DNA of 63,845 bases, the filler included, from Octopus bimaculoides (lineage: Eukaryota): NCBI RefSeq assembly GCF_001194135.2. It is 7 parts of 7 records of this genome, joined end to end, with 100 filler letters (N's around TTAATTAATTAA, not from the genome) between each part and the next. Parts side by side here need not be neighbours in the genome. Positions count along the whole stretch, not along the records: positions 21,740 to 47,610 come from NC_068981.1; 6 more parts are not named here. One strand, written 5' to 3'. Below, piece by piece: positions 22,596-46,477 of the stretch. Numbering within the stretch: position 1 is the first letter of the stretch; each line of letters opens with the position of its first letter. A program made the translations under genes and the position numbers. Below the pieces are notes generated by a model. It saw only the letters and a list, made by a program, of their open reading frames with translations, was not told the DNA's origin and ran no database searches.

Positions 22596-22773
22596 AATAT
22601 TCTTTTCTACACTAGGCACGAGGCCCGAAATTTTGGGGGAGGGGGCGAGTCGATTAGATCGACCCCAATACGCAACTGGTACTTAATTTATCGACCCCGA
22701 AAGGATAAAAGGCAAAGTCGACCTCGGCGGAATTTGAACTCAGTATGTAAAGACAGACGAAATACCGCTAAGC
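22596..22773 (-). mobile_element. SINE family B
   Basis: TTTATCGACCCCGAAAGGATAAAAGGCAAAGTCGACCTCGGCGGAATTTGAACTCAG. Confidence 0.9.
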
Positions 22774-23195: not shown

Positions 23196-23282
23196 NNNNN
23201 NNNNNNNNNNNNNNNNNNNNNNNNNNNNNNNNNNNNNNNNNNNNNNNNNNNNNNNNNNNNNNNNNNNNNNNNNNNNNNNNNN

Positions 23283-26774: not shown

Positions 26775-26982
26775 TAAGGTAGCGGGTTGGCAGCGTCATT
26801 ATTGCACTGGATAACATTAATAACGGTATTTCTTCCGGCATTCCGTTCCGAATTCAAACTCCGCAAAGTTCGACTTTGTCTTTTATCTTTTCGGGCTCTA
26901 TAAAATAAATACCATTCGAAAACTGGGGTCGATGTAATCGATTATCCCCCACCCACCAAAAAATTTCAAGCCTTGTGTCAAT
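26775..26982 (+). mobile_element. SINE family B, diverged
   Basis: CGAATTCAAACTCCGC..TTCGACTTTGTCTTTTATC..GGGGTCGATGTAATCGA. Confidence 0.75.
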
Positions 26983-27337: not shown

Positions 27338-27845
27338 TTATCTATATTTAATAACAACGCAACCTACCCTACTTAATAAAACGAAAGAAACAAACAAAAA
27401 CTGAAATTTTTTGTTGTTAAATATTTTGGTTGTTCCTATGAATTGAAAGAACTTATTAATGGTCGGCAGATCCTTGGAAATGAATTGTATCTTTAACATT
27501 GGTAATCTTTTGAAAACTGGCTTTAAAATTTTATCTCTCTCAATCTGATAATTTTTACATTGAACTATATAATGCCATAAACTTTCTGAATAGTCTCGGT
27601 AAAAACATAAAGGTGATTCCATACGACCTGTTTGCGATAGTATATAATATGACCCGTACGTAGTCAACAAAATCTTTGATTATTTGTATTGTTCAGTGAT
27701 CGATAAGTTTTATAAGATGATAAATCTGCTTGAGATAATGGCGGATTAAAGTTTGATATTTTATCTATTGATTCTTCCAAATATTTTCTCGACTCTTAAC
27801 TGATTACGTTTTTACAAAATGGTCTTGGGATAGATTTAAATGTAA

Positions 27846-28326: not shown

Positions 28327-29289
28327 TATCAAGTTTCATTGGATATNNNNNNNNNNNNNNNNNNNNNNNNNNNNNNNNNNNNNNNNNNNNNNNNNNNNNN
28401 NNNNNNNNNNNNNNNNNNNNNNNNNNNNNNNNNNNNNNNNNNNNNNNNNNNNNNNNNNNNNNNNNNNNNNNNNNNNNNNNNNNNNNNNNNNNNNNNNNNN
28501 NNNNNNNNNNNNNNNNNNNNNNNNNNNNNNNNNNNNNNNNNNNNNNNNNNNNNNNNNNNNNNNNNNNNNNNNNNNNNNNNNNNNNNNNNNNNNNNNNNNN
28601 NNNNNNNNNNNNNNNNNNNNNNNNNNNNNNNNNNNNNNNNNNNNNNNNNNNNNNNNNNNNNNNNNNNNNNNNNNNNNNNNNNNNNNNNNNNNNNNNNNNN
28701 NNNNNNCCCCCCCCCCATACCTATAGGAGAAAGGATAATTATTAGTAGTATCAATAGTGCTACTTCAGGTATTATTAATGGCTTAATTTCATATTTCATC
28801 TGTGCCTGTAGCAGAATATTCGTCTAATGCATTTTTAGTAGAGATATTAACAATGTTAAGTGTTTAATGAATGCTAAGTGGAGATACTGCAATCTTTGGA
28901 GTGAGAGGAGCAAATGATATATTTTTTAACTTGTTTGTTTAAAAAGAAATTTCGCAAAATATTTTAAGTGTTACTTATGATCATTAGTAAAGCATATATA
29001 ACGTTTTTTGAAAACTAATCGCCCTATGATGCCAATTTTCTTTCAGAAACTTGAAAGAAGGTTTGATATTAAGAGTTCATTTGTTCAATTCCAGCGAATC
29101 ACTGGTATTGCCAACACAGGAAAGTCGAAATTACTGTTGACATCAAAGTAAAATAATAAAATATTCTAGTAAGTACGTAAAAAGTATAACATATAACATT
29201 GTACTAATAAGGACTGTACAGATATAGCATTTTACTAATAGGGATTTCGAATATTGACACAATGTCATACATTTTAGAAGTTTCTAGAT

Positions 29290-29438
29290 CAGATACGGGC
29301 GCTTTCGAGAAACGGGCCGCATGAGACACGGCTCATCATGCTTTTAGTGACACTGCACTACTGAAAACAACCTCTGTAGTTTTTCATTAAGCACGTTGTT
29401 CCGTGGGCTGCGTGCGGTCCGCAGTTTGCTTATGACAG
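29290..29438. mobile_element. Degenerate hAT-Charlie-type MITE
   Basis: Flanked by TTCTAGAT and GTCTAGAT (7/8; nTCTAGAn Charlie target). Starts CAG; subterminal GGGCCGCATG / GCGTGCGGTCCGCAGTTTG. Confidence 0.5.
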
Positions 29439-30357
29439 GTCTAGATTAACCCCAGTTCTTAACTGGGACTTTGATTTATTGGACCACAGAAGTATGGATG
29501 GTAAAGTTGACCCATGCAAGGTCAACTGGAACGTAAAAGAAGTAGTTAGTATTGATTTCTGACATGGTACAATATCAGTATTTGACTGATAGTTTCTTTA
29601 TCGACCTGGAAGAATGAAGAACAAACTCAGGACGTAATATCACGCATAAAACATATACCATGAGGGTTTTTATACCATCACTCTAATGATTCTGTTATTC
29701 ATGCCTTGTGACATTTTGTAGAGGTGTGTGTGTGTGTGTGATTTTAACTGGGAATTACGTTAAAGCTACGCGTTTCTGTGAAATATTCAGTCACTTAATT
29801 CAATGAGCAGGTAATTCATTTGATCAAGCAACTGAATCGTTATCGTAGAGACCGACGGAGAGCCTTCTGGTATAGTATACATATATATACATGCGCACCA
29901 CACGCACATACATACACACAGACATGCGCACACACAGACACACACACATATGTATACAGAGAGAGAGAGAGAGAGAGTGACAGAGAGAGAAAGTGAGAAA
30001 GAGAGACAGTGATAGAGGGAAAGAAATAGATCAAACAAAAGAAAGGGAAGAAAGAAAAAAAATGAAAAGCAACGAAAACAACAAACATTAATAAGACCAT
30101 AATAAAGATGATTAATTATTAAAATATGCGGGGTGAGAAAGGAGGGCAGCCCAGCATAAAAGAGGACAGCCATAGTGTTTAGCAATTTCCGCGAGAATGT
30201 GTGTACATTAGATTGTGTGTGTGGTTAGATATAGCCATAGATATACAAAATTAGGGAAGTAATTATTAATTAGCAGAACGTAAGTGTTTGTCATTTTATA
30301 TGTAAAGTTAATGTATGGAGGGGCGTGGGGGATAAAAAAAATAATAAATGGTGTGCG

Positions 30358-30488
30358 GAAATTATGAAATGTTTTAAGGATTTCGTCAAAAGCTTCGTGA
30401 AATTTGACTAGTGTTTTCCAACAATTTGTAAAATGTCGTCAAATTCCATACAGCATTTGACAAATCCCATAAAACGTTTAATCATTTC
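30358..30488. mobile_element. Palindromic MITE-like element
   Basis: Imperfect arms 30358-30390 and 30456-30488 (GAAAT.AT.AAA.GTTTTA..GATTT.GTCAAA), with an inner GAAATTTGAC/GTCAAATTCC pair. Confidence 0.55.
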
Positions 30489-30490
30489 TC

Positions 30491-30646
30491 AACGGCTGTG
30501 TGGTAAGTAGCTTGCTTACCAACCACATGGTTCCGGGTTCAGTCCCACCACATGGCATCTTGGGCAAGTGTGTGCTACTATACCCACGAGCCGACCAAAG
30601 TCTTGTGAGTGGATTTGGTAGACCGAAATTGAAAAAAAGCCCGTCG

Positions 30647-30723
<77 letters not shown>

Positions 30724-30905
30724 CCAACATCGCTTGACAACCGACGCTGGTGTGTTTACGTCCCCGTAACTTAGTGGTTCGGCAAAAGAGACCGATAGAA
30801 TAAGTACTAGGCTTCCAAAGAATAAGTCCCGGGGTCGATTTGCTCGACTAAAGGCGGTGCTCCAGCATGGCCACAGTCAAAAGTCTGAAACAAGTAAGAG
30901 TAAGT
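30491..30905 (+). mobile_element. SINE family A, full length
   Basis: Head GGCTGTGTGGTAAGTAGC..GGTTCAGTCCC, (TA)/(TG) slot, 3' end GAAACAAGTAAGAG. Confidence 0.92.
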
Positions 30906-30943
30906 AAGAGCATTAAAATTTTATCATTATAATTCACACTACA

Positions 30944-31147
30944 AAGGTGACGAGCTGGTAAAATCGTTTCCCCGCCGGGAAAAATGCTCAGCGGCATTTC
31001 GTCCGTCCTGAGTTCAAATTCCGCCGAGGTCGAGTTTTGCCTTTCATCTATTCGAACAAAACAAGTACCAGTTGAACAGTGGGGTCGATGTAATCGATTC
31101 ACCCTCTCCCCTGAAATTGCTGGCCTTGATCCAGAATTTGAAATCAT
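30944..31147 (+). mobile_element. SINE family B
   Basis: AAGGTGACGAGCTGG..CTGAGTTCAAATTCCGCCGAGGTCGAG..CCAGAATTTGAAATCATT. Confidence 0.88.
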
Positions 31148-31439
31148 TATCATTATTATTAAGGCAGAGAACAGGGGGAGAATATTTAGAATAAGCACAT
31201 GTAAAAAGTCTGATTCAAACCACTCGATTATGATCTTTCAATGATAATATATCAATAAAGGAAGTTACCCGGTGAAAAAAGCTTAAGAAAGGATCTGCTC
31301 CAAACAGAAACTGTAAGGAAAACGTAAAGATAGTTCAAGTATATAAGAGTTTTACCTGTCTACTTCGACAGAATATATATATACATACACAATACCTAAC
31401 AGGGGATAGTGGAGATCAAATAAGTCTTCACCTGCAATA

Positions 31440-31985
31440 AAGGATTCCATCTATCTTGTCACGTTTGACACATCTATTCTGAGGTGGTCTCAGCTCTCAT
31501 GGCTACCGCTCAAGCGACTTTCTTCTGCAATAGATAACGCACTAGTTTTGCTGGCAAATTCCAGAAGCCATTTTCCACGAGGAGTGAGTCAGCATGCTAC
31601 CTTTTCACAAGAGCTTCGTGTGTCAAATTCTGGTATTTTGTTTTCTTCGGTTGGTGAAAGATGCCAAGTTCTGTCCTTCCACAGTACTGTTAATTCAGTT
31701 ACTAAAGCGGTTTTTAATGTTCCTGAATAACAAAACTTGGTCGGCTCGTGGGTATAGTAGCACACACTTGCCCAAGATGCCATGTGGTGGGACTGAACCC
31801 GGAACCATGTGGTTGGTAAGCAAGCTACTTACCACACAGCCGTTGAGAAATGATTAAACGTTTTGTTATTCAGGTTTGATCGGATCAATGTTAGTACTGA
31901 TCTTCAAGGAAGACGAATCTCTTCATAACGTCTGTTCCTCTCAGTCAGAAGCACGCTGCAGAATGCTTTTGGCCTTAGAAGGTTT
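31440..31985 (-). mobile_element. Hero/R2-group (REL endonuclease) retrotransposon fragment, split by an insertion at 31737-31870
   Basis: Minus-strand peptide pieces SILQRASD*, KRFVF, IRSNL|VL-YSGTLKTALVTELTV, KKTKYQNL and AETTSE* follow the order of the PD..D/ELT..K REL domain. Confidence 0.7.
31737..31864 (-). repeat. Perfect 128-bp inverted duplication of 30471-30598
   Basis: Base-by-base reverse complement identical, including non-SINE flank and copy-private variants. Confidence 0.95.
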
Positions 31986-32999
31986 ATAACCTTCGATAAA
32001 AATACCACTAAGTAACATTTATCTTCGACAGTAGATTATGATGGTTTGAGTTACTAAAATATTAACTCCTATATTGAATAACAAGTCAATATACAAACAG
32101 GTCTAGCTATGTGTTCAGCTCTATGTAATTTATTTATTATTGCAGTCGGAACGTAAAGCCTACGTTAAAAGGTGTTCAGCTGTGTTAATGGTGTTATTTA
32201 GTTATTTATAGATGTTATGTTGTTATACATATGTCATTGTGAGACACTACAACATTTGTGATGTTCAATGAAAACGCTTGTTAATTGAGTGTGAAATGTG
32301 AATTGTGAAACTGGTGAATTATAAATGGAATTTTATATATATAATACACATATATTCACACTCATATATAGACATATATACATGCATACTTACATTTGCA
32401 TCTGTGTAGGGATGGGACGTACTTACGTGTGTGCGTGCGTGAGCGCGCGCGTGTGTATGTATGTGTGCGTGTGCGTGTGTGTGTGTAAATACTAGCAGTA
32501 AGTCAACCACTATAGCTTTGGTTCATAAATTAAGCTTAACAAATTACCGCTATGAATAAATAAATAATCTACTTTCCCTCTTCTATGAATCTGATTGACA
32601 CTATGATTAAAGGAGATATATGTAATATCTGACGATATATTTCAATCGAAACTGCGCTCGGAAAGCGTTGAAAATCGTGGTTGACTGAACAACAAGAGTT
32701 AAAAGCAATGAAAATTCGCATATATAACACTAATTGTGAACCTATGTTACTTTTGTTGGTGTTGTTGTTGTGTTGTTAGTAACCTGTCAAACGTCTACTT
32801 TTGTCATGCAGTGTCGCTGTCTCAGAAAGTCACATTTTACTTACTGTACAGTTGTTTTTATAAATGTTTAACTCTATATCAGCAGTACTCAATATCAGCA
32901 ATAGTTTTTCAGAGGCATGACCAGAGATGTATTCTTGACCATGATGTCTTTTGCATACATCAAAGAATAATAATAATAATTATTATTATTATTATCATT

Positions 33000-33410
33000 G
33001 CGGCGAGCTTGAAAAGAATGCTTAGCGGTATTTCGTCCCTCGCTACGGACGAAATACCGCTGGGTTCAAATTCCATCGAGGTCGACTTTGCCATTCATCC
33101 TTTCGGTGTCGATTAAATAAGTACCAGTTACGTACTGAGGTCGATGTAATCGACTTACCTCACTTCCCGCAAATTTCACGCCTTGTGCTTATAATAGAAG
33201 GGATTATTATTATAATTATGGCGGCGAGCTAGACAAAATGCTTAACGTTATTTCGTCCGTCGCTACGTTCTGAGTTCAAATTCCACCGAAGTCGACTTTG
33301 TCTTTCATCCTTTCGAGGTCGATGAATTTAGTACCAGTTGAACACTGGCGTCGATGTAATCGACTCATCCCCACCTCTTCCAAGCTGCCCTTAAGGCAAA
33401 AATTTGAAAT
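33000..33410 (+). mobile_element. Two tandem SINE family B copies separated by (ATT)n
   Basis: GCGGCGAGCT heads at 33000 and 33221; each has the B-box and the CCTTTCGG.GTCGAT segment. Confidence 0.9.
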
Positions 33411-33493
33411 AATAATAATAATTATTATATGGCAGCGAAAATATTATTATTATAATAATAATAATAATAATTATTATTATTATTATTATTATT

Positions 33494-33757
33494 GCCTTTG
33501 CACAACTTCTAACGCTGGAGATGTACTACAGTTTCAGCTGTTCACTACCAGTGAACTAAGGTAACACCTTTTATTTTTCGAGCGCCTTCCAGAGTATTCG
33601 AGCGGTTCCAAGCAGTGCTGTTTACTGCAAGTGCTCCACCTTTATTGCAGCCCCTATTTGTTTCACGTACTTCTTGAGATTTTTGCTCACTGTTCCAGAG
33701 GGTTCCGACAATTATTGGTACTACTGCTACCTTTTTCATTGACCACAACTGCTGATT
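33494..33757 (-). mobile_element. 5'-truncated REL-type (R4/Dong-like) retrotransposon in (TAA)n
   Basis: Translation with one frameshift: WSMKKVAVVPIIVGTL / GTVSKNLKKYVKQIG..LQ*TALLGTARILWKALEK*. (AAT)n at both ends. Confidence 0.8.
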
Positions 33758-34017
33758 GTTATTATTATTATTATTTCAAGAATAACAGTATCTAATTTGA
33801 GCAGTATTTCGTTGGTATTTTGAACTATTTAAGGGATCACCCAGACATTTTCGCGTTGTTGGTGGTATTGTTGTCTAACCTAAACCAACATTGATTCAGA
33901 GACCTTTGATTCAAAGGATTTTATAAATGGAGGAGATACAATTTAAAAAAAAAATTTAAGAATGCTGTACGAGATGTAGATATACCTTGGTGTTTGAGGG
34001 TATTGTAATTATATTGG

Positions 34018-34186
34018 TTTCAAATTTTGGCACAAGGCCAGCAATTTAGAGCAAGTGGGAAAGACGATCGAAGCGACTGGTAGTTATTTTCTCGACCCGG
34101 CATTTGAATTCAGGGCGGAAAGACGGACGAAATACTGCTAAGCTTTTCACTCAGTATGCTAACAATTCTGCCAACACCGCCGCCTT
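34018..34186 (-). mobile_element. SINE family B, partial
   Basis: CAAATTTTGGCACAAGGCC..GACGGACGAAATACTGCTAAGC..CAATTCTGCCAAC.CCGCCGCCTT. Confidence 0.8.
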
Positions 34187-34642
34187 CGTATTGAACTTAT
34201 ATTGACAGAAACTGTGGGATTAGGGTTTGATACTGAAACTGCGGGGATGTCTGAGGTTTGTATAAACACTGAACTTTTGAAGCAATCGCAACCAAGTAAA
34301 AGCAACCCGTAATTAGAATGTACGCGGAAAGCCTTTTGCTTTTCATTTACGTATCGTTTTTCAACACAGCGTTGTTTATATACAAGACTACTGAGCATGA
34401 TATGCGGGTGTGCCTCTCTGAAACTGTGTCTCTAATTGTGTTACCTGTTAAAAAAAAATTAAGGTCATCCATCTCATTAAAAATCTATCATTAAATTAAA
34501 CGGAATTGATTTGTTATAGAGGCACAGGGTCAGAAATTTTGGTAGGAGAATCAGCTTATGATACGTCATCAAAATGATGAAAGTTAAATTTGAACACAGT
34601 GGGATTTGAAATTATATCAAATTAATAGTAAATAATACTTAC

Positions 34643-34855
34643 TTGCTGTCCGTTCCACAGCATCTGTTTTACACTGTATTCTACACACAGGCTATGCCAT
34701 TGCCAGGCATTATTAAGTGGAATGGAAGAAGAAAATGTTTGAACACCTGTACTTAAATCACTGACGTTGTTATTGTTGTTGCTGTTGATTAAGTCAATTA
34801 CAAGGTTGAGCCAGCAGGTGTGTATGTATAAGTCTATATTTTCTAATACTGTGTT
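34643..34855 (-). CDS. Candidate phase-0/0 coding exon (71 aa, ..NAWQWHSLCVEYSVKQMLWNGQQ)
   Basis: Acceptor atcactttcag|, donor CAA|gtaagta, 213 nt open in frame 0. Weak resemblance to the LamG/pentraxin WH..C..(Y/W)..NG pattern. Unconfirmed. Confidence 0.3.
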
Positions 34856-34869
34856 CTGAAAGTGATATA

Positions 34870-35069
34870 CACAGACATGACAGGAGTAAATAGACACCCC
34901 ATAAAACATGGTTTTATGCTTATTTTAACATGAAAAATGTAAAGGACATGTCTTCTAAATATTAGATATTCACATTATAATAATTAATAAATAATCTGAA
35001 TGTATGATTACAGATTTAAATTAATTTTAATGAATATAAGGGTGTCTGTTTACTTCTATCATGTCTGTA
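34870..35069. mobile_element. Tc1-like MITE
   Basis: 30-bp TIRs, 26/30 matching (CACAGACATGACAGGAGTAAATAGACACCC), TA on both sides. Confidence 0.8.
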
Positions 35070-35104
35070 TATATCAGACCTACCGTACAAATATATATAT
35101 ATAT

Positions 35105-35228
35105 AAACTGAAAGACGTTTGCAATAAGTGTGTGAATCTGAGAGGGGAACATGTTGAATAAAATCGCAATTAACTGATCCTCGTATATTTTCCTTTACAC
35201 AAAACTAGGAACTCTTCAGCAGCCCCTC

Positions 35229-35230
<2 letters not shown>
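35105..35230 (+). mobile_element. Mariner 3' end fragment
   Basis: KLKDVCNKCVNLRGEHVE* resembles the mariner C-terminus (KC...GDY.E*), followed by a TIR-like AGGAACTCTTCAGCAGCCCCTCATA. Confidence 0.6.
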
Positions 35231-35290
<60 letters not shown>

Positions 35291-35369
35291 ATATATATGT
35301 ATATATATGTATATATGTATATATATNNNNNNNNNNNNNNNNNNNNNNNNNNNNNNNNNNNNNNNNNNN

Positions 35370-37917: not shown

Positions 37918-38137
37918 AAGAGGCAGCGAGATAGCAGAATCGTTTGGACGCCGGGCAAAATGTTTAACGGTATTTCGTCCGTCTTCACGTTCTGAGTTCA
38001 AATTCCACCGAGGTCGACTTTGTCTTTCATCCTTTCGGGATCGATGAAATAAGTACTAGTTGAGCATTAGGATCGATGTAATCGGCTTGCCCCCTCCCAC
38101 GAAATTGCTGGCCCCTGTGCCAAAATTTGAAACCTAT
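37918..38137 (+). mobile_element. SINE family B, full length
   Basis: GCAGAATCGTT..CGCCGGGCAAAATG..GAGTTCAAATTCCACCGAGGTCGAC..GTGCCAAAATTTGAAACC. Confidence 0.92.
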
Positions 38138-42982: not shown

Positions 42983-43693
42983 GCTGCTGATGATGATGAT
43001 GATGATGATGATGATGTTGATGGTGGTGGTGGTGGTGGTNNNNNNNNNNNNNNNNNNNNNNNNNNNNNNNNNNNNNNNNNNNNNNNNNNNNNNNNNNNNN
43101 NNNNNNNNNNNNNNNNNNNNNNNNNNNNNNNNNNNNNNNNNNNNNNNNNNNNNNNNNNNNNNNNNNNNNNNNNNNNNNNNNNNNNNNNNNNNNNNNNNNN
43201 NNNNNNNNNNNNNNNNNNNNNNNNNNNNNNNNNNNNNNNNNNNNNNNNNNNNNNNNNNNNNNNNNNNNNNNNNNNNNNNNNNNNNNNNNNNNNNNNNNNN
43301 NNNNNNNNNNNNNNNNNNNNNNNNNNNNNNNNNNNNNNNNNNNNNNNNNNNNNNNNNNNNNNNNNNNNNNNNNNNNNNNNNNNNNNNNNNNNNNNNNNNN
43401 NNNNNNNNNNNNNNNNNNNNNNNNGGGGAGGGGGAGGGGGAGGAGGAGACTGCTGCTGTCTTTGGCCCTGATTCTTTTATAAGTGTAGTATTCCATTTTG
43501 GGTGTCACCTGACGTTTGGGAAATGTTGGCAGTTCTTAGAGACACAAGTATTCTCTGGCTCCGAAGAGCAAAACCAGTTTGTGTGAAGCCGGTTTTGCTA
43601 TCTTAGAGATGTGCGTTCTCAAGTAGAAATCCTAAGTTACGGTGAGATGGCCTTTGATGGATGTAATCTTAATATTTCAATTTTTGTGTTACT

Positions 43694-44100
43694 CTTTTAT
43701 TCTTTTACTTGTTTCAGTCATTTCACTGTGGCCATGCTGGAGCACCACCTTTAGTCGAGCAAATCGACCCCAGGACTTATTCTTTGTAAACCTGGTACTT
43801 ATTCTATCGGTCTCTTTTGCCGAATCGCTATGTTACGGGGACGTAAACGCACCAGCATCGGTTGTCAAGCGATGATGGGGGGACAAACACGGACATACAA
43901 ACATATGCACACACAAATACGTACATATATATACATATATACGACGGGCTTCTTTCAGTTTCCGACTACCAAATCCACTCACAAGGCTTTGGTCGGCCCG
44001 AGGCTATAGTAGAAGACACTTGCCCAAGGTGCCACGCAGTGGAACTGAACCCGGAACCATGTGGTTGGTAAGCAAGCTACTTACCACACAGCCACTCCTA
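43694..44100 (-). mobile_element. SINE family A, full length, well preserved
   Basis: Complete 3' end, microsatellite slot and tRNA-like head to CACAGCCACTCCTA. Confidence 0.95.
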
Positions 44101-46085: not shown

Positions 46086-46266
46086 CTGACATGATTTAAA
46101 TAAACAACTTTGCACTGATATTTCACTGCTTCACAGAGATTACCTGATATATTTTCAATGATCGACACAAGTGAAAATGATTGCATTCACCAAATTACTA
46201 TTAATAAACTTATCCAAATTTTACATATTAGCTATTTTGATATTTTATCATAGTAATTAAAACTGG

Positions 46267-46477
46267 TTTCCAACTGTGACACAAGTCCAATACTTTACGG
46301 GTAGGAGGTAATCGATTACATCGACCCCAGTGCTCAACTAGTACTTTATTTTATCAAACTCGAAAGGATAAGGGGTAAAGTTGTCCTCGGCAGAATTTGA
46401 ACTCAGCTGCAATGACGGACGAAATGTCGCTAAGCATTTTGCCCGGCGAGCTACCGATTCTGCCAGCTCACCGCCTT
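46267..46477 (-). mobile_element. SINE family B
   Basis: CGGCAGAATTTGAACTCAG..CGCTAAGCATTTTGCCCGGCG..GATTCTGCCAGCTCACCGCCTT. Confidence 0.88.

What the first reader, a model, noticed from the sequence alone, without database searches (positions are those of the whole stretch)
30471..31874. Three-step templated inverted insertion: perfect 128-bp inverted repeat splitting a retroelement motif
31737-31864 is the exact reverse complement of 30471-30598, including 20 bp of non-SINE flank and copy-private SINE variants, so it was copied locally rather than retrotransposed. It is bracketed by a perfect 15-bp inverted repeat (CCTGAATAACAAAAC 31722-31736; GTTTTGTTATTCAGG 31860-31874). Removing 31737-31870 restores the Hero-like reading ..RSNL|VL-YSGT... 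The junctions fit serial template switches: fold-back at CCTG/CAGG, jump to the donor via AAAAC, return via imperfect AAGT(C/T)TT. This is the signature of polymerase-theta-type end joining or replication template switching (inference). If transcribed, the arms would form perfect dsRNA with a 1.1-kb loop, an ideal ADAR substrate in a lineage known for heavy A-to-I editing.
Basis: partly seen in the sequence, partly recalled or inferred. Interest (0 to 1): 0.75.

Follow-up and report, generated by a model that had tools for sequence, protein, structure and literature searches.

The report
Inverted templated insertion copying nearby SINE
A roughly 135-bp patch in non-coding, repeat-rich DNA is an exact upside-down copy of the start of a SINE repeat (plus its private flank) 1.1 kb away, followed by a 10-bp upside-down copy of the insertion site; it looks like a scar of polymerase template switching, a known kind of mutation, and no reads could be used to confirm it.

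Summary
31737-31864 is the perfect reverse complement of 30471-30598, and it is bracketed by a perfect 15-nt inverted repeat (31722-31736 / 31860-31874). The donor is a full-length SINE (30494-30900) plus 23 nt of private flank. The inverted copy carries that flank and all 10 donor-private variants, and it lacks the SINE's 3' part. It was therefore copied locally at the DNA level, not retrotransposed. Both junctions show non-random homology: 5 nt (AAAAC), and 6 of 7 nt with a 1-nt slip. The joint chance is about 1e-4. This fits microhomology-primed serial template switching, either snap-back synthesis on a resected 3' tail or a fork switch. Which polymerase acted cannot be told, and the ancestral state and order of steps are unresolved. 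The "Hero-like retroelement" reading has no support: no Pfam hit and no homologue among 1.84 billion proteins. The ADAR idea is untested; the 128-bp stem is predicted, but transcription is unknown. Read mapping was closed, and no independent assembly was found, so an artefact is not excluded, though I judge it unlikely. A second, small template-switch-like hairpin lies at 33024-33061. Verdict: probably real, a large and tidy new example of a known kind of mutation. Interest is modest.

The parts
30471..30493 (+). Donor, part 1: 23 nt of non-SINE flank immediately upstream of the donor SINE. Its first 5 nt (AAAAC, 30471-30475) are the microhomology with the target.
   Evidence: Alignment A1: the other two SINE copies have unrelated sequence here, and only the inverted copy shares it.
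30494..30598 (+). Donor, part 2: the first 105 nt (tRNA-like head) of the donor SINE, which were copied.
   Evidence: It has 10 differences from the copy at 43989-44093, and the inverted copy shares all of them.
30494..30900 (+). Full-length donor SINE: head, internal (TA)n(TG)n microsatellite at about 30640-30725, and a 3' region. This shows that this copy is the original and the inverted one is derived.
   Evidence: 85% identity over 409 nt to 44093-43702.
30600..30606 (+). GTCTTGT just beyond the copied segment. It is an imperfect (6 of 7) complement of the target's ACAAAAC and a candidate priming site for the first switch. One A of the AAA run at 30597-30599 is missing in the copy.
   Evidence: BLAST extends the match to 30471-30606 / 31864-31730, 136 columns with 1 gap and 1 mismatch. 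The chance of 6 of 7 or better, allowing a 1-nt slip, is 0.009.
31722..31736 (+). Left arm of the 15-nt bracket, CCTGAATAACAAAAC. It is either the ancestral target sequence (H1) or the newly made copy (H2).
31737..31864 (-). Inverted templated copy of 30471-30598. Its last 5 nt (31860-31864, GTTTT) can be assigned either to the donor or to the local bracket, so they are junction microhomology.
   Evidence: 100% reverse complement. The chance of 5 nt or more of overlap with a random donor is 0.002.
31865..31874 (-). Second, short templated segment: GTTATTCAGG, the reverse complement of 31722-31731. Up to 4 nt (CAGG) could be ancestral right flank.
   Evidence: The motif is unique to these two sites in the window.
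31876..31888 (.). Small palindrome TTGATC-G-GATCAA, starting 2 nt to the right of the insertion. It is a possible local hairpin or stalling site; this is inference only.
   Evidence: Read directly from the sequence.

Best explanation
This is a genuine and evolutionarily recent DNA-templated insertion, made by microhomology-primed template switching. In the simplest reading, a 3' end finishing in ...CCTGAATAACAAAAC (top strand, 31736) came off its template. This happened either at a double-strand break after resection of more than 1.3 kb, or at a stalled fork.

Step 1: the end paired imperfectly (6 of 7 nt) with GTCTTGT at 30600-30606 on the same strand, 1.13 kb upstream. It then copied 123-128 nt leftwards, through the SINE head and into its flank.

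Step 2: the new end ...GTTTT re-paired with AAAAC at 31732-31736 and copied 6-10 more nt (GTTATT[CAGG]).

Step 3: it rejoined the right-hand side.

All templates lie on one strand to the left of the site. Snap-back synthesis in cis on a resected tail, or a switch from the leading strand to the lagging-strand template, would each give exactly this product.

Shown here: the copies, their orientation, which copy is the donor, and the junction homologies. Inferred: the break or stall, the order of steps, the enzyme (Pol theta, Pol delta or a replicative polymerase), and that one event rather than two made the structure. The by-product is a perfect 128-bp inverted repeat with a 1.1-kb spacer. No function is indicated.
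For: The repeats are exact.

The donor direction is fixed: 30494-30900 is a complete SINE, while the inverted copy has only the head.

The copy shares the donor's private 23-nt flank and its 10 private variants.

The copy is truncated at the 3' end and has no tail, which excludes ordinary SINE retrotransposition.

Junction homologies are rare with random donors: P about 0.002 and 0.009, jointly about 1e-4.

There are zero differences in 128 nt, while other SINE pairs differ by 10-30%, so the copy is recent.

The feature lies 3 kb or more from any N gap, inside one 6.6-kb contig.

A second, smaller inverted templated patch sits in the same piece at 33024-33061.

Precedents exist: snap-back SD-MMEJ with iterative re-annealing (PMC5728401); yeast foldback insertions of 2 to about 150 bp primed at imperfect inverted microhomology (PMC11724301); germline multi-template MMB-TI with 'microhomeology' (PMC8421209); and template-switch mutations of up to 128 nt in great apes (PMC7954356).
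Against: No reads, no second assembly and no empty allele could be examined.

The donor distance (1.13 kb) and tract length (128 nt) are well beyond the usual range of TMEJ/SD-MMEJ: primers within about 30 bp and inserts of about 2-35 bp (PMC5728401, PMC11724301). They are also beyond the 100-bp window used to define MMB-TI (PMC8421209).

The first junction needs both a mismatch and a 1-nt slip.

The ancestral sequence is unknown, so the third microhomology (CCTG/CAGG) is an assumption.
Confidence: 0.62

Rival explanations
1. Two separate events. A 15-nt perfect inverted repeat, CCTGAATAACAAAAC...GTTTTGTTATTCAGG, already existed, for instance from an earlier short template-switch mutation. It formed a hairpin and broke at its centre. 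A single snap-back or foldback round then inserted the 123-nt donor copy. This gives two junctions, not three steps.
For: The same piece holds another 15-nt perfect hairpin that looks like a short template-switch product (33024-33061), so such repeats do arise here. With a pre-existing repeat, both junctions are explained by the observed 6-of-7 and 5-nt homologies, and no third junction has to be assumed.
Against: It needs two rare events at one spot. Inverted repeats of 12 nt or more are expected only 0.25 times per 26 kb by chance. No trace of a former spacer remains between the bracket arms.
Confidence: 0.12
2. Assembly, gap-filling or library artefact. In this view the inverted patch is not present in the organism's genome.
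For: The piece looks like a scaffolded short-read assembly, with N gaps of 43-385 nt. Nothing independent could be obtained to confirm the junctions. Polymerases also make microhomology-mediated inverted chimeras in vitro; this is my own knowledge of MDA and PCR chimeras.
Against: The patch is 3 kb or more from any gap. The host sequence is colinear on both sides. Graph or overlap joins need k-mer-length overlaps, not 5 nt, and missed-adapter long-read chimeras fold back the whole read rather than a 128-nt piece from 1.1 kb away; both points are inference. Rare chimeric molecules should not reach the consensus.
Confidence: 0.13
3. An RNA template. A Pol III transcript of the neighbouring donor SINE was reverse-transcribed from the broken DNA end, primed internally at GUCUUGU, and ran off at the RNA's 5' end. 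The cDNA end then re-paired at AAAAC. This would be a twin-priming-like or RNA-templated repair event.
For: The copy ends at 30471-30475, which is 19-23 nt upstream of the A-box-like GGCTGTGTGG at 30494. That is near where Pol III would be expected to start (my own knowledge, not tested). Run-off would explain why copying stopped there.
Against: In a genome this rich in SINEs (several copies of two families within this 26-kb piece), an RNA acting in trans would rarely come from the copy only 1.1 kb away. A DNA snap-back in cis explains the proximity directly. No RNA-specific mark is present, such as an extra 5' G, edited bases or a tail. ARAGORN and Rfam do not recognise the head as a tRNA.
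Confidence: 0.07
4. A small DNA transposon (MITE) of 153 bp with 15-nt terminal inverted repeats that captured a SINE fragment.
For: There are perfect 15-nt terminal inverted repeats. The flanking bases are TT on both sides, a possible 2-bp duplication.
Against: The interior is 100% identical to a unique flank-plus-SINE segment 1.1 kb away, and it overlaps the terminal repeat by 5 nt, which is junction-like. The repeat's 10-mer occurs nowhere else in the piece. TT/TT is weak evidence in DNA that is 62% A+T.
Confidence: 0.02
5. An independent, oppositely oriented SINE insertion that was later homogenised with the neighbouring copy by gene conversion.
For: Inverted SINE pairs are common in such genomes, and conversion can make arms identical; this is general knowledge.
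Against: The copy includes 23 nt of the donor's non-SINE flank. It lacks the SINE's whole 3' part and tail. It ends in microhomology with the target.
Confidence: 0.01

Closest known systems
Snap-back SD-MMEJ and Pol-theta-mediated end joining with templated insertions (PMC5728401, PMC2943611, PMC4912351, PMC4032859)
   Same: A 3' end folds back on its own strand at a short inverted 'primer repeat' and copies it. It then dissociates, can re-anneal for further rounds, and finally joins the other end at microhomology. The products are inverted copies of nearby sequence, as seen here.
   Different: Reported primer repeats lie within about 10-30 bp of the break, and inserts are mostly under 35 nt. 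Here the template is 1.13 kb away and the tract is 123-128 nt. Pol theta dependence cannot be tested from sequence.
Pol-delta-dependent foldback insertions at double-strand breaks in yeast (PMC11724301)
   Same: Imperfect inverted microhomology primes foldback synthesis of 2 to about 150 bp. The nascent strand unwinds and is captured by the other end, leaving a longer inverted repeat. The size range covers the 128-nt tract.
   Different: The loop in yeast was 41 nt, against about 1.13 kb here. The present case has a second nested foldback of 10 nt.
MMBIR / FoSTeS templated insertions (MMB-TI; PMC8421209, PMC2621351)
   Same: These are inverted templated insertions flanked by microhomology or 'microhomeology' (one mismatch or gap). 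Complex germline events with up to three templates have been described.
   Different: The MMB-TI search definition requires the template within 100 bp. The first junction here needs both a mismatch and a gap.
Short template-switch mutations, four-point model (PMC5453318, PMC7954356), and hairpin or miRNA birth by template switching (PMC8794818, 10.1101/2023.04.19.537475)
   Same: Replication briefly copies the opposite strand and creates perfect inverted repeats de novo. The small event at 33024-33061 fits this model directly. The 128-nt tract equals the longest 'gold-standard' event reported in great apes.
   Different: The model explicitly leaves out long-range and multiple successive switches. 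The present event has a 1.1-kb jump and two inverted segments.
L1 twin priming / 5' inversion (my own knowledge; Ostertag and Kazazian 2001)
   Same: A second 3' end primes internally on the template and yields an inverted segment that ends at the template's 5' end, with microhomology at the junctions.
   Different: Twin priming leaves a directly oriented, 3' tailed part and target-site duplications. None is present here.

Membership tests
Microhomology-mediated templated insertion (SD-MMEJ / foldback / MMB-TI class) | The inserted sequence is an exact copy of a sequence nearby on the same chromosome. | tested here: met
   128 of 128 nt are identical to 30471-30598, and 10 of 10 nt to 31722-31731.
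Microhomology-mediated templated insertion (SD-MMEJ / foldback / MMB-TI class) | The copy is in inverted orientation relative to its template (snap-back or foldback subtype). | tested here: met
   Both templated segments are reverse complements of templates on the same strand.
Microhomology-mediated templated insertion (SD-MMEJ / foldback / MMB-TI class) | Microhomology or microhomeology at the switch junctions, beyond chance. | tested here: met
   5 nt of AAAAC (P 0.002), and 6 of 7 nt with a 1-nt slip (P 0.009), jointly about 1e-4 in 200,000 random donors. The third junction cannot be assessed.
Microhomology-mediated templated insertion (SD-MMEJ / foldback / MMB-TI class) | The template lies close to the insertion: within 100 bp in the MMBSearch definition, or about 30 bp in SD-MMEJ assays. 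| tested here: not met
   There are 1138 nt between the arms. The definitions are in PMC8421209 and PMC5728401.
Microhomology-mediated templated insertion (SD-MMEJ / foldback / MMB-TI class) | Derived state shown by an empty allele or orthologue, and dependence on a polymerase (Pol theta or Pol delta). | not testable with these tools
Retrotransposed SINE copy | A complete 3' end and tail, truncation (if any) at the 5' end, target-site duplication, and no carry-over of the source locus flank. | tested here: not met
   Only the 5' 105 nt of the 409-nt SINE are present. The donor's 23-nt upstream flank is carried along. The copy is bracketed by an inverted repeat, not a direct one.
Hero-like / restriction-enzyme-like-endonuclease non-LTR retroelement as the host sequence | A recognisable reverse transcriptase or endonuclease reading frame, or homologues of the translated host sequence. 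| tested here: not met
   There is no Pfam family at E up to 10 apart from one chance 10-residue match. There were 0 hits at E 0.01 or better and 0 hits at E 0.001 or better in 1.84 billion representatives. Stops occur in all frames. A very decayed remnant cannot be excluded.
MITE / small terminal-inverted-repeat transposon | Terminal inverted repeats, a target-site duplication, and multiple dispersed copies. | tested here: inconclusive
   The terminal repeats are present. Only TT/TT flanks them. No other copy is in the piece, and the whole genome could not be searched.
ADAR / long-hairpin dsRNA substrate | A long, near-perfect intramolecular duplex in a transcript, and A-to-G clusters in RNA reads. 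| tested here: inconclusive
   A 128-bp perfect stem dominates the predicted fold of 30440-31900. The lineage was not identified.

The most novel reading that the evidence does not exclude
In one step, the event created a perfect 128-bp long-hairpin locus from a SINE head. If the region lies in a transcribed intron or UTR, this would be the birth of a long dsRNA element, either an ADAR hyper-editing site or an endo-siRNA source. It would have arisen by kilobase-range, multi-switch template switching, about ten times the scale so far described for hairpin or miRNA birth. It would also be a route to inverted SINE pairs that needs no second retrotransposition.
Probability: 0.06. Interest if true: 0.55.

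Novelty: new member of a known kind. Interest (0 to 1): 0.27.

Why it matters
If real, this is an unusually clean natural example of a multi-step templated insertion. The tract is long (128 nt) and the template is 1.1 kb away, at or beyond the upper edge of what assays and comparative screens have catalogued.

It shows that SINE fragments and perfect inverted SINE pairs can arise by repair or replication errors rather than by retrotransposition. That matters for repeat annotation, for dating of SINE copies, and for counts of dsRNA-forming inverted repeats.

It does not open a new question. The mechanism class is well established in yeast, flies, worms and humans.

Tried and rejected

**Independent assemblies through exact ORF look-ups.** Five ORFs in or near the junction were looked up, and none is on record.

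**Homology search with the junction-spanning 87-aa ORF.** The aim was to catch filled or empty alleles. No candidate was found.

**Scan of metagenome contigs.** A 24-nt unique left-flank pattern gave 0 matches.

**'Hero-like' reading.** Pfam, the word-indexed search and an exhaustive phmmer search were all negative. Pfam on eight other ORFs of the piece was also negative.

**RNA searches.** Rfam and ARAGORN on the piece found nothing.

**Reading frame as a guide to the ancestral state.** With no evidence that the frame is coding, this carries no weight (a 1-in-3 coincidence).

**Explanations considered and set aside.** These were an independent SINE insertion followed by gene conversion, and a MITE (see the rival explanations).

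**Lineage.** The third protein-database search was not spent on identifying the lineage, because it would not bear on the main question.

Full report
**1. Observation**

31737-31864 is the exact reverse complement of 30471-30598: 128 nt, 100% identity, 1138 nt between the arms. CCTGAATAACAAAAC at 31722-31736 and GTTTTGTTATTCAGG at 31860-31874 are exact reverse complements. The five bases at 31860-31864 belong to both the long arm and the short bracket.

The 10-mer GTTATTCAGG occurs only at these two places in the window. The expectation is 0.07, and none of 100 shuffles gave two matches.

Perfect non-low-complexity inverted repeats of 12 nt or more with a spacer of 200 nt or less are expected 0.25 times in this 25.9-kb piece.

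In a self-comparison of the piece, every other SINE pair is at most 90% identical. The 100% pair is an outlier.

**2. What the two copies are**

30494-30900 is a complete SINE of about 409 nt. It has a tRNA-like head, an internal (TA)n(TG)n microsatellite and a 3' region, and it matches 44093-43702 at 85% over its whole length. A third, more diverged copy lies at 41111-40947.

The alignment shows that the family consensus starts a few bases upstream of GGCTGTGTGG (30494). The 23 nt at 30471-30493 are unrelated to what precedes the other two copies.

The inverted copy has these features:
- It contains those 23 flank nucleotides.
- It shares all 10 positions at which the donor differs from the 44-kb copy. 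It is 100% identical to the donor and 90.5% to 43989-44093.
- It stops in the middle of the SINE at position 105, with no 3' region or tail.

Retrotransposition truncates 5' ends and does not carry upstream flank.

Zero differences in 128 nt, against 10-30% between other copies, make the copy recent. The upper bound is roughly 2% divergence (3/128; my inference).

**3. Junctions**

*Right junction.* The donor begins with AAAAC (30471-30475). The same AAAAC ends the left bracket (31732-36), so 5 nt are shared.

*Left junction.* Perfect identity stops at 31737. The donor then continues A-GTCTTGT (30599-30606), and the target reads, in reverse complement, GTTTTGT. That is 6 of 7 nt after dropping one A of an AAA run. 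BLAST accordingly extends the match to 136 columns with one gap and one mismatch.

With 200,000 random donor positions in the same contig, such homologies occur with P about 0.002 and 0.009, and together with P about 1e-4. The junctions therefore carry the microhomology/'microhomeology' signature of polymerase template switching (terms as in PMC8421209).

**4. Mechanism**

Both templated segments are reverse complements of sequence on the same (top) strand to the left of the site. The most economical path runs as follows:
- A top-strand 3' end finishing in ...ACAAAAC pairs with GTCTTGT 1.13 kb upstream on its own strand.
- It copies 123-128 nt and dissociates.
- It re-pairs through GTTTT/AAAAC at the insertion site and copies 6-10 nt more.
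- It is then joined to the right-hand side, possibly through CAGG/CCTG.

After a double-strand break with more than 1.3 kb of resection, all of this is snap-back synthesis in cis. At a fork, it is a switch from the leading strand to the lagging-strand template.

What cannot be settled without the empty site is which 15-mer is ancestral:
- **H1:** the left arm is ancestral.
- **H2:** the right arm is ancestral. The removed block is 31722-31859, which is 138 nt, a multiple of three. The junction homologies would be 0, 6 of 7, and 5.
- **H3:** both arms pre-existed as a hairpin-forming repeat, and only the 123-nt block was inserted.

In a break-repair model H1 is the natural reading, because everything happens in cis. 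In a fork model H1 and H2 are equally possible.

The enzyme is not identifiable from sequence. A 128-nt tract and a 1.1-kb reach are atypical for Pol theta/SD-MMEJ, where primers lie within about 30 bp and inserts are mostly under 35 nt (PMC5728401, PMC11724301). They are within reach of Pol-delta foldback synthesis (2 to about 150 bp; PMC11724301) or MMBIR-type switching (PMC8421209, PMC2621351).

**5. The 'retroelement motif'**

- No Pfam family matches.
- No hit was found in the word-indexed protein search.
- No hit at E 0.001 or better was found in an exhaustive phmmer search of 1.84 billion representatives.
- All six frames of 31150-32520 are broken by many stops.
- The host sequence is not repeated elsewhere in the piece.

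The frame is somewhat more open than expected for DNA that is 62% A+T, so a very decayed coding remnant cannot be excluded. Nothing identifies it as Hero-like.

**6. The dsRNA/ADAR idea**

If 30440-31900 were transcribed as one RNA, the 128-bp perfect stem would dominate its fold. That follows trivially from the repeat. Rfam and ARAGORN found nothing, and no ORF of the piece has a Pfam domain. Clustered editing in repeat-derived dsRNA is widespread in Metazoa (PMC5625713), so the idea is reasonable but unsupported here.

**7. Artefact?**

The piece looks like a scaffolded short-read assembly, with N runs of 43-385 nt. The feature sits inside a 6.6-kb gap-free stretch, at least 3 kb from any gap.

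The host sequence is colinear on both sides. The joins rest on 5-7 nt of homology, far too short for graph or overlap joins. The patch is not a whole-read fold-back. On these grounds (inference) I put an artefact at about 13%.

Nothing independent could be obtained:
- Five exact ORF look-ups failed.
- A homology search with the junction-spanning ORF found no candidate.
- A metagenome scan for the unique flank found nothing.

**8. Other rivals**

- *RNA template.* A Pol III transcript of the donor SINE could have served as template. This is suggested only by the copy ending 19-23 nt upstream of the A-box-like motif, and it explains the 1.1-kb proximity poorly.
- *MITE.* A 153-bp element with 15-nt termini does not explain the 100% identity of its interior to a unique neighbouring segment or the 5-nt overlap. 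The termini occur nowhere else in the piece.
- *Independent SINE insertion plus gene conversion.* This is contradicted by the shared flank and the 3' truncation.

**9. A second small event**

AGCGGTATTTCGTCC (33024-33038) and GGACGAAATACCGCT (33047-33061) form a perfect 15-nt hairpin with an 8-nt loop. It lies inside one copy of a second SINE family.

Five other copies of that family lack the 10-12 nt GACGAAATACCG. Those bases are the reverse complement of the sequence just upstream. This is what a short template-switch mutation of the four-point type looks like (PMC5453318). It shows the same class of error, at its usual scale, 1.2 kb from the finding.

**10. Verdict**

The finding is a new, large and tidy member of a known kind of mutation. 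It matches templated, foldback or template-switch insertions in orientation and junction signature. It fails only the proximity criterion that some operational definitions use. Interest is modest (0.27).

Noticed in passing
window 33024-33061: A perfect 15-nt inverted repeat (AGCGGTATTTCGTCC / GGACGAAATACCGCT, 8-nt loop) lies inside one copy of a second SINE family. Five paralogous copies lack the 10-12 nt GACGAAATACCG, which are the reverse complement of the adjacent upstream bases. It looks like a short template-switch mutation.
   Followed up: partly
window 31876-31888: A small palindrome, TTGATC-G-GATCAA, starts 2 nt to the right of the inserted block. It could form a hairpin and stall replication or be cut; this is pure inference.
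   Followed up: no
As the frame has no homologue, this is probably a 1-in-3 coincidence.
   Followed up: yes
window 30471-30494: The copied segment ends 19-23 nt upstream of the A-box-like GGCTGTGTGG of the donor SINE, about where a Pol III start might lie (my own knowledge). This prompted the RNA-template rival, which was not testable here.
   Followed up: partly
window 32982-33375 (also 30951-31143, 37921-38134, 46265-46476, 22596-22773, 26821-26960): A second SINE family (...GAGTTCAAATTCC..GGTCGATGTAATCGACT...) occurs at least seven times in the piece. Two copies lie head to tail, about 210 nt apart, at 33017-33170 and 33234-33375.
   Followed up: no
window 27338-27670 (minus strand): A 110-aa ORF contains CFYRDYSESLWHYIVQC, which from memory resembles the cysteine/histidine motif at the C-terminus of some LINE ORF2 proteins. 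It has no Pfam hit, and upstream the frame is broken. It may be the retroelement remnant nearest to the finding, but it lies 4 kb away.
   Followed up: partly
window 23196-23282, 28347-28706, 35327-35369, 43040-43424: All four N gaps are flanked by microsatellites or homopolymer-rich low-complexity sequence, typical of short-read contig breaks. The finding lies in the 6.6-kb gap-free stretch 28707-35326.
   Followed up: no
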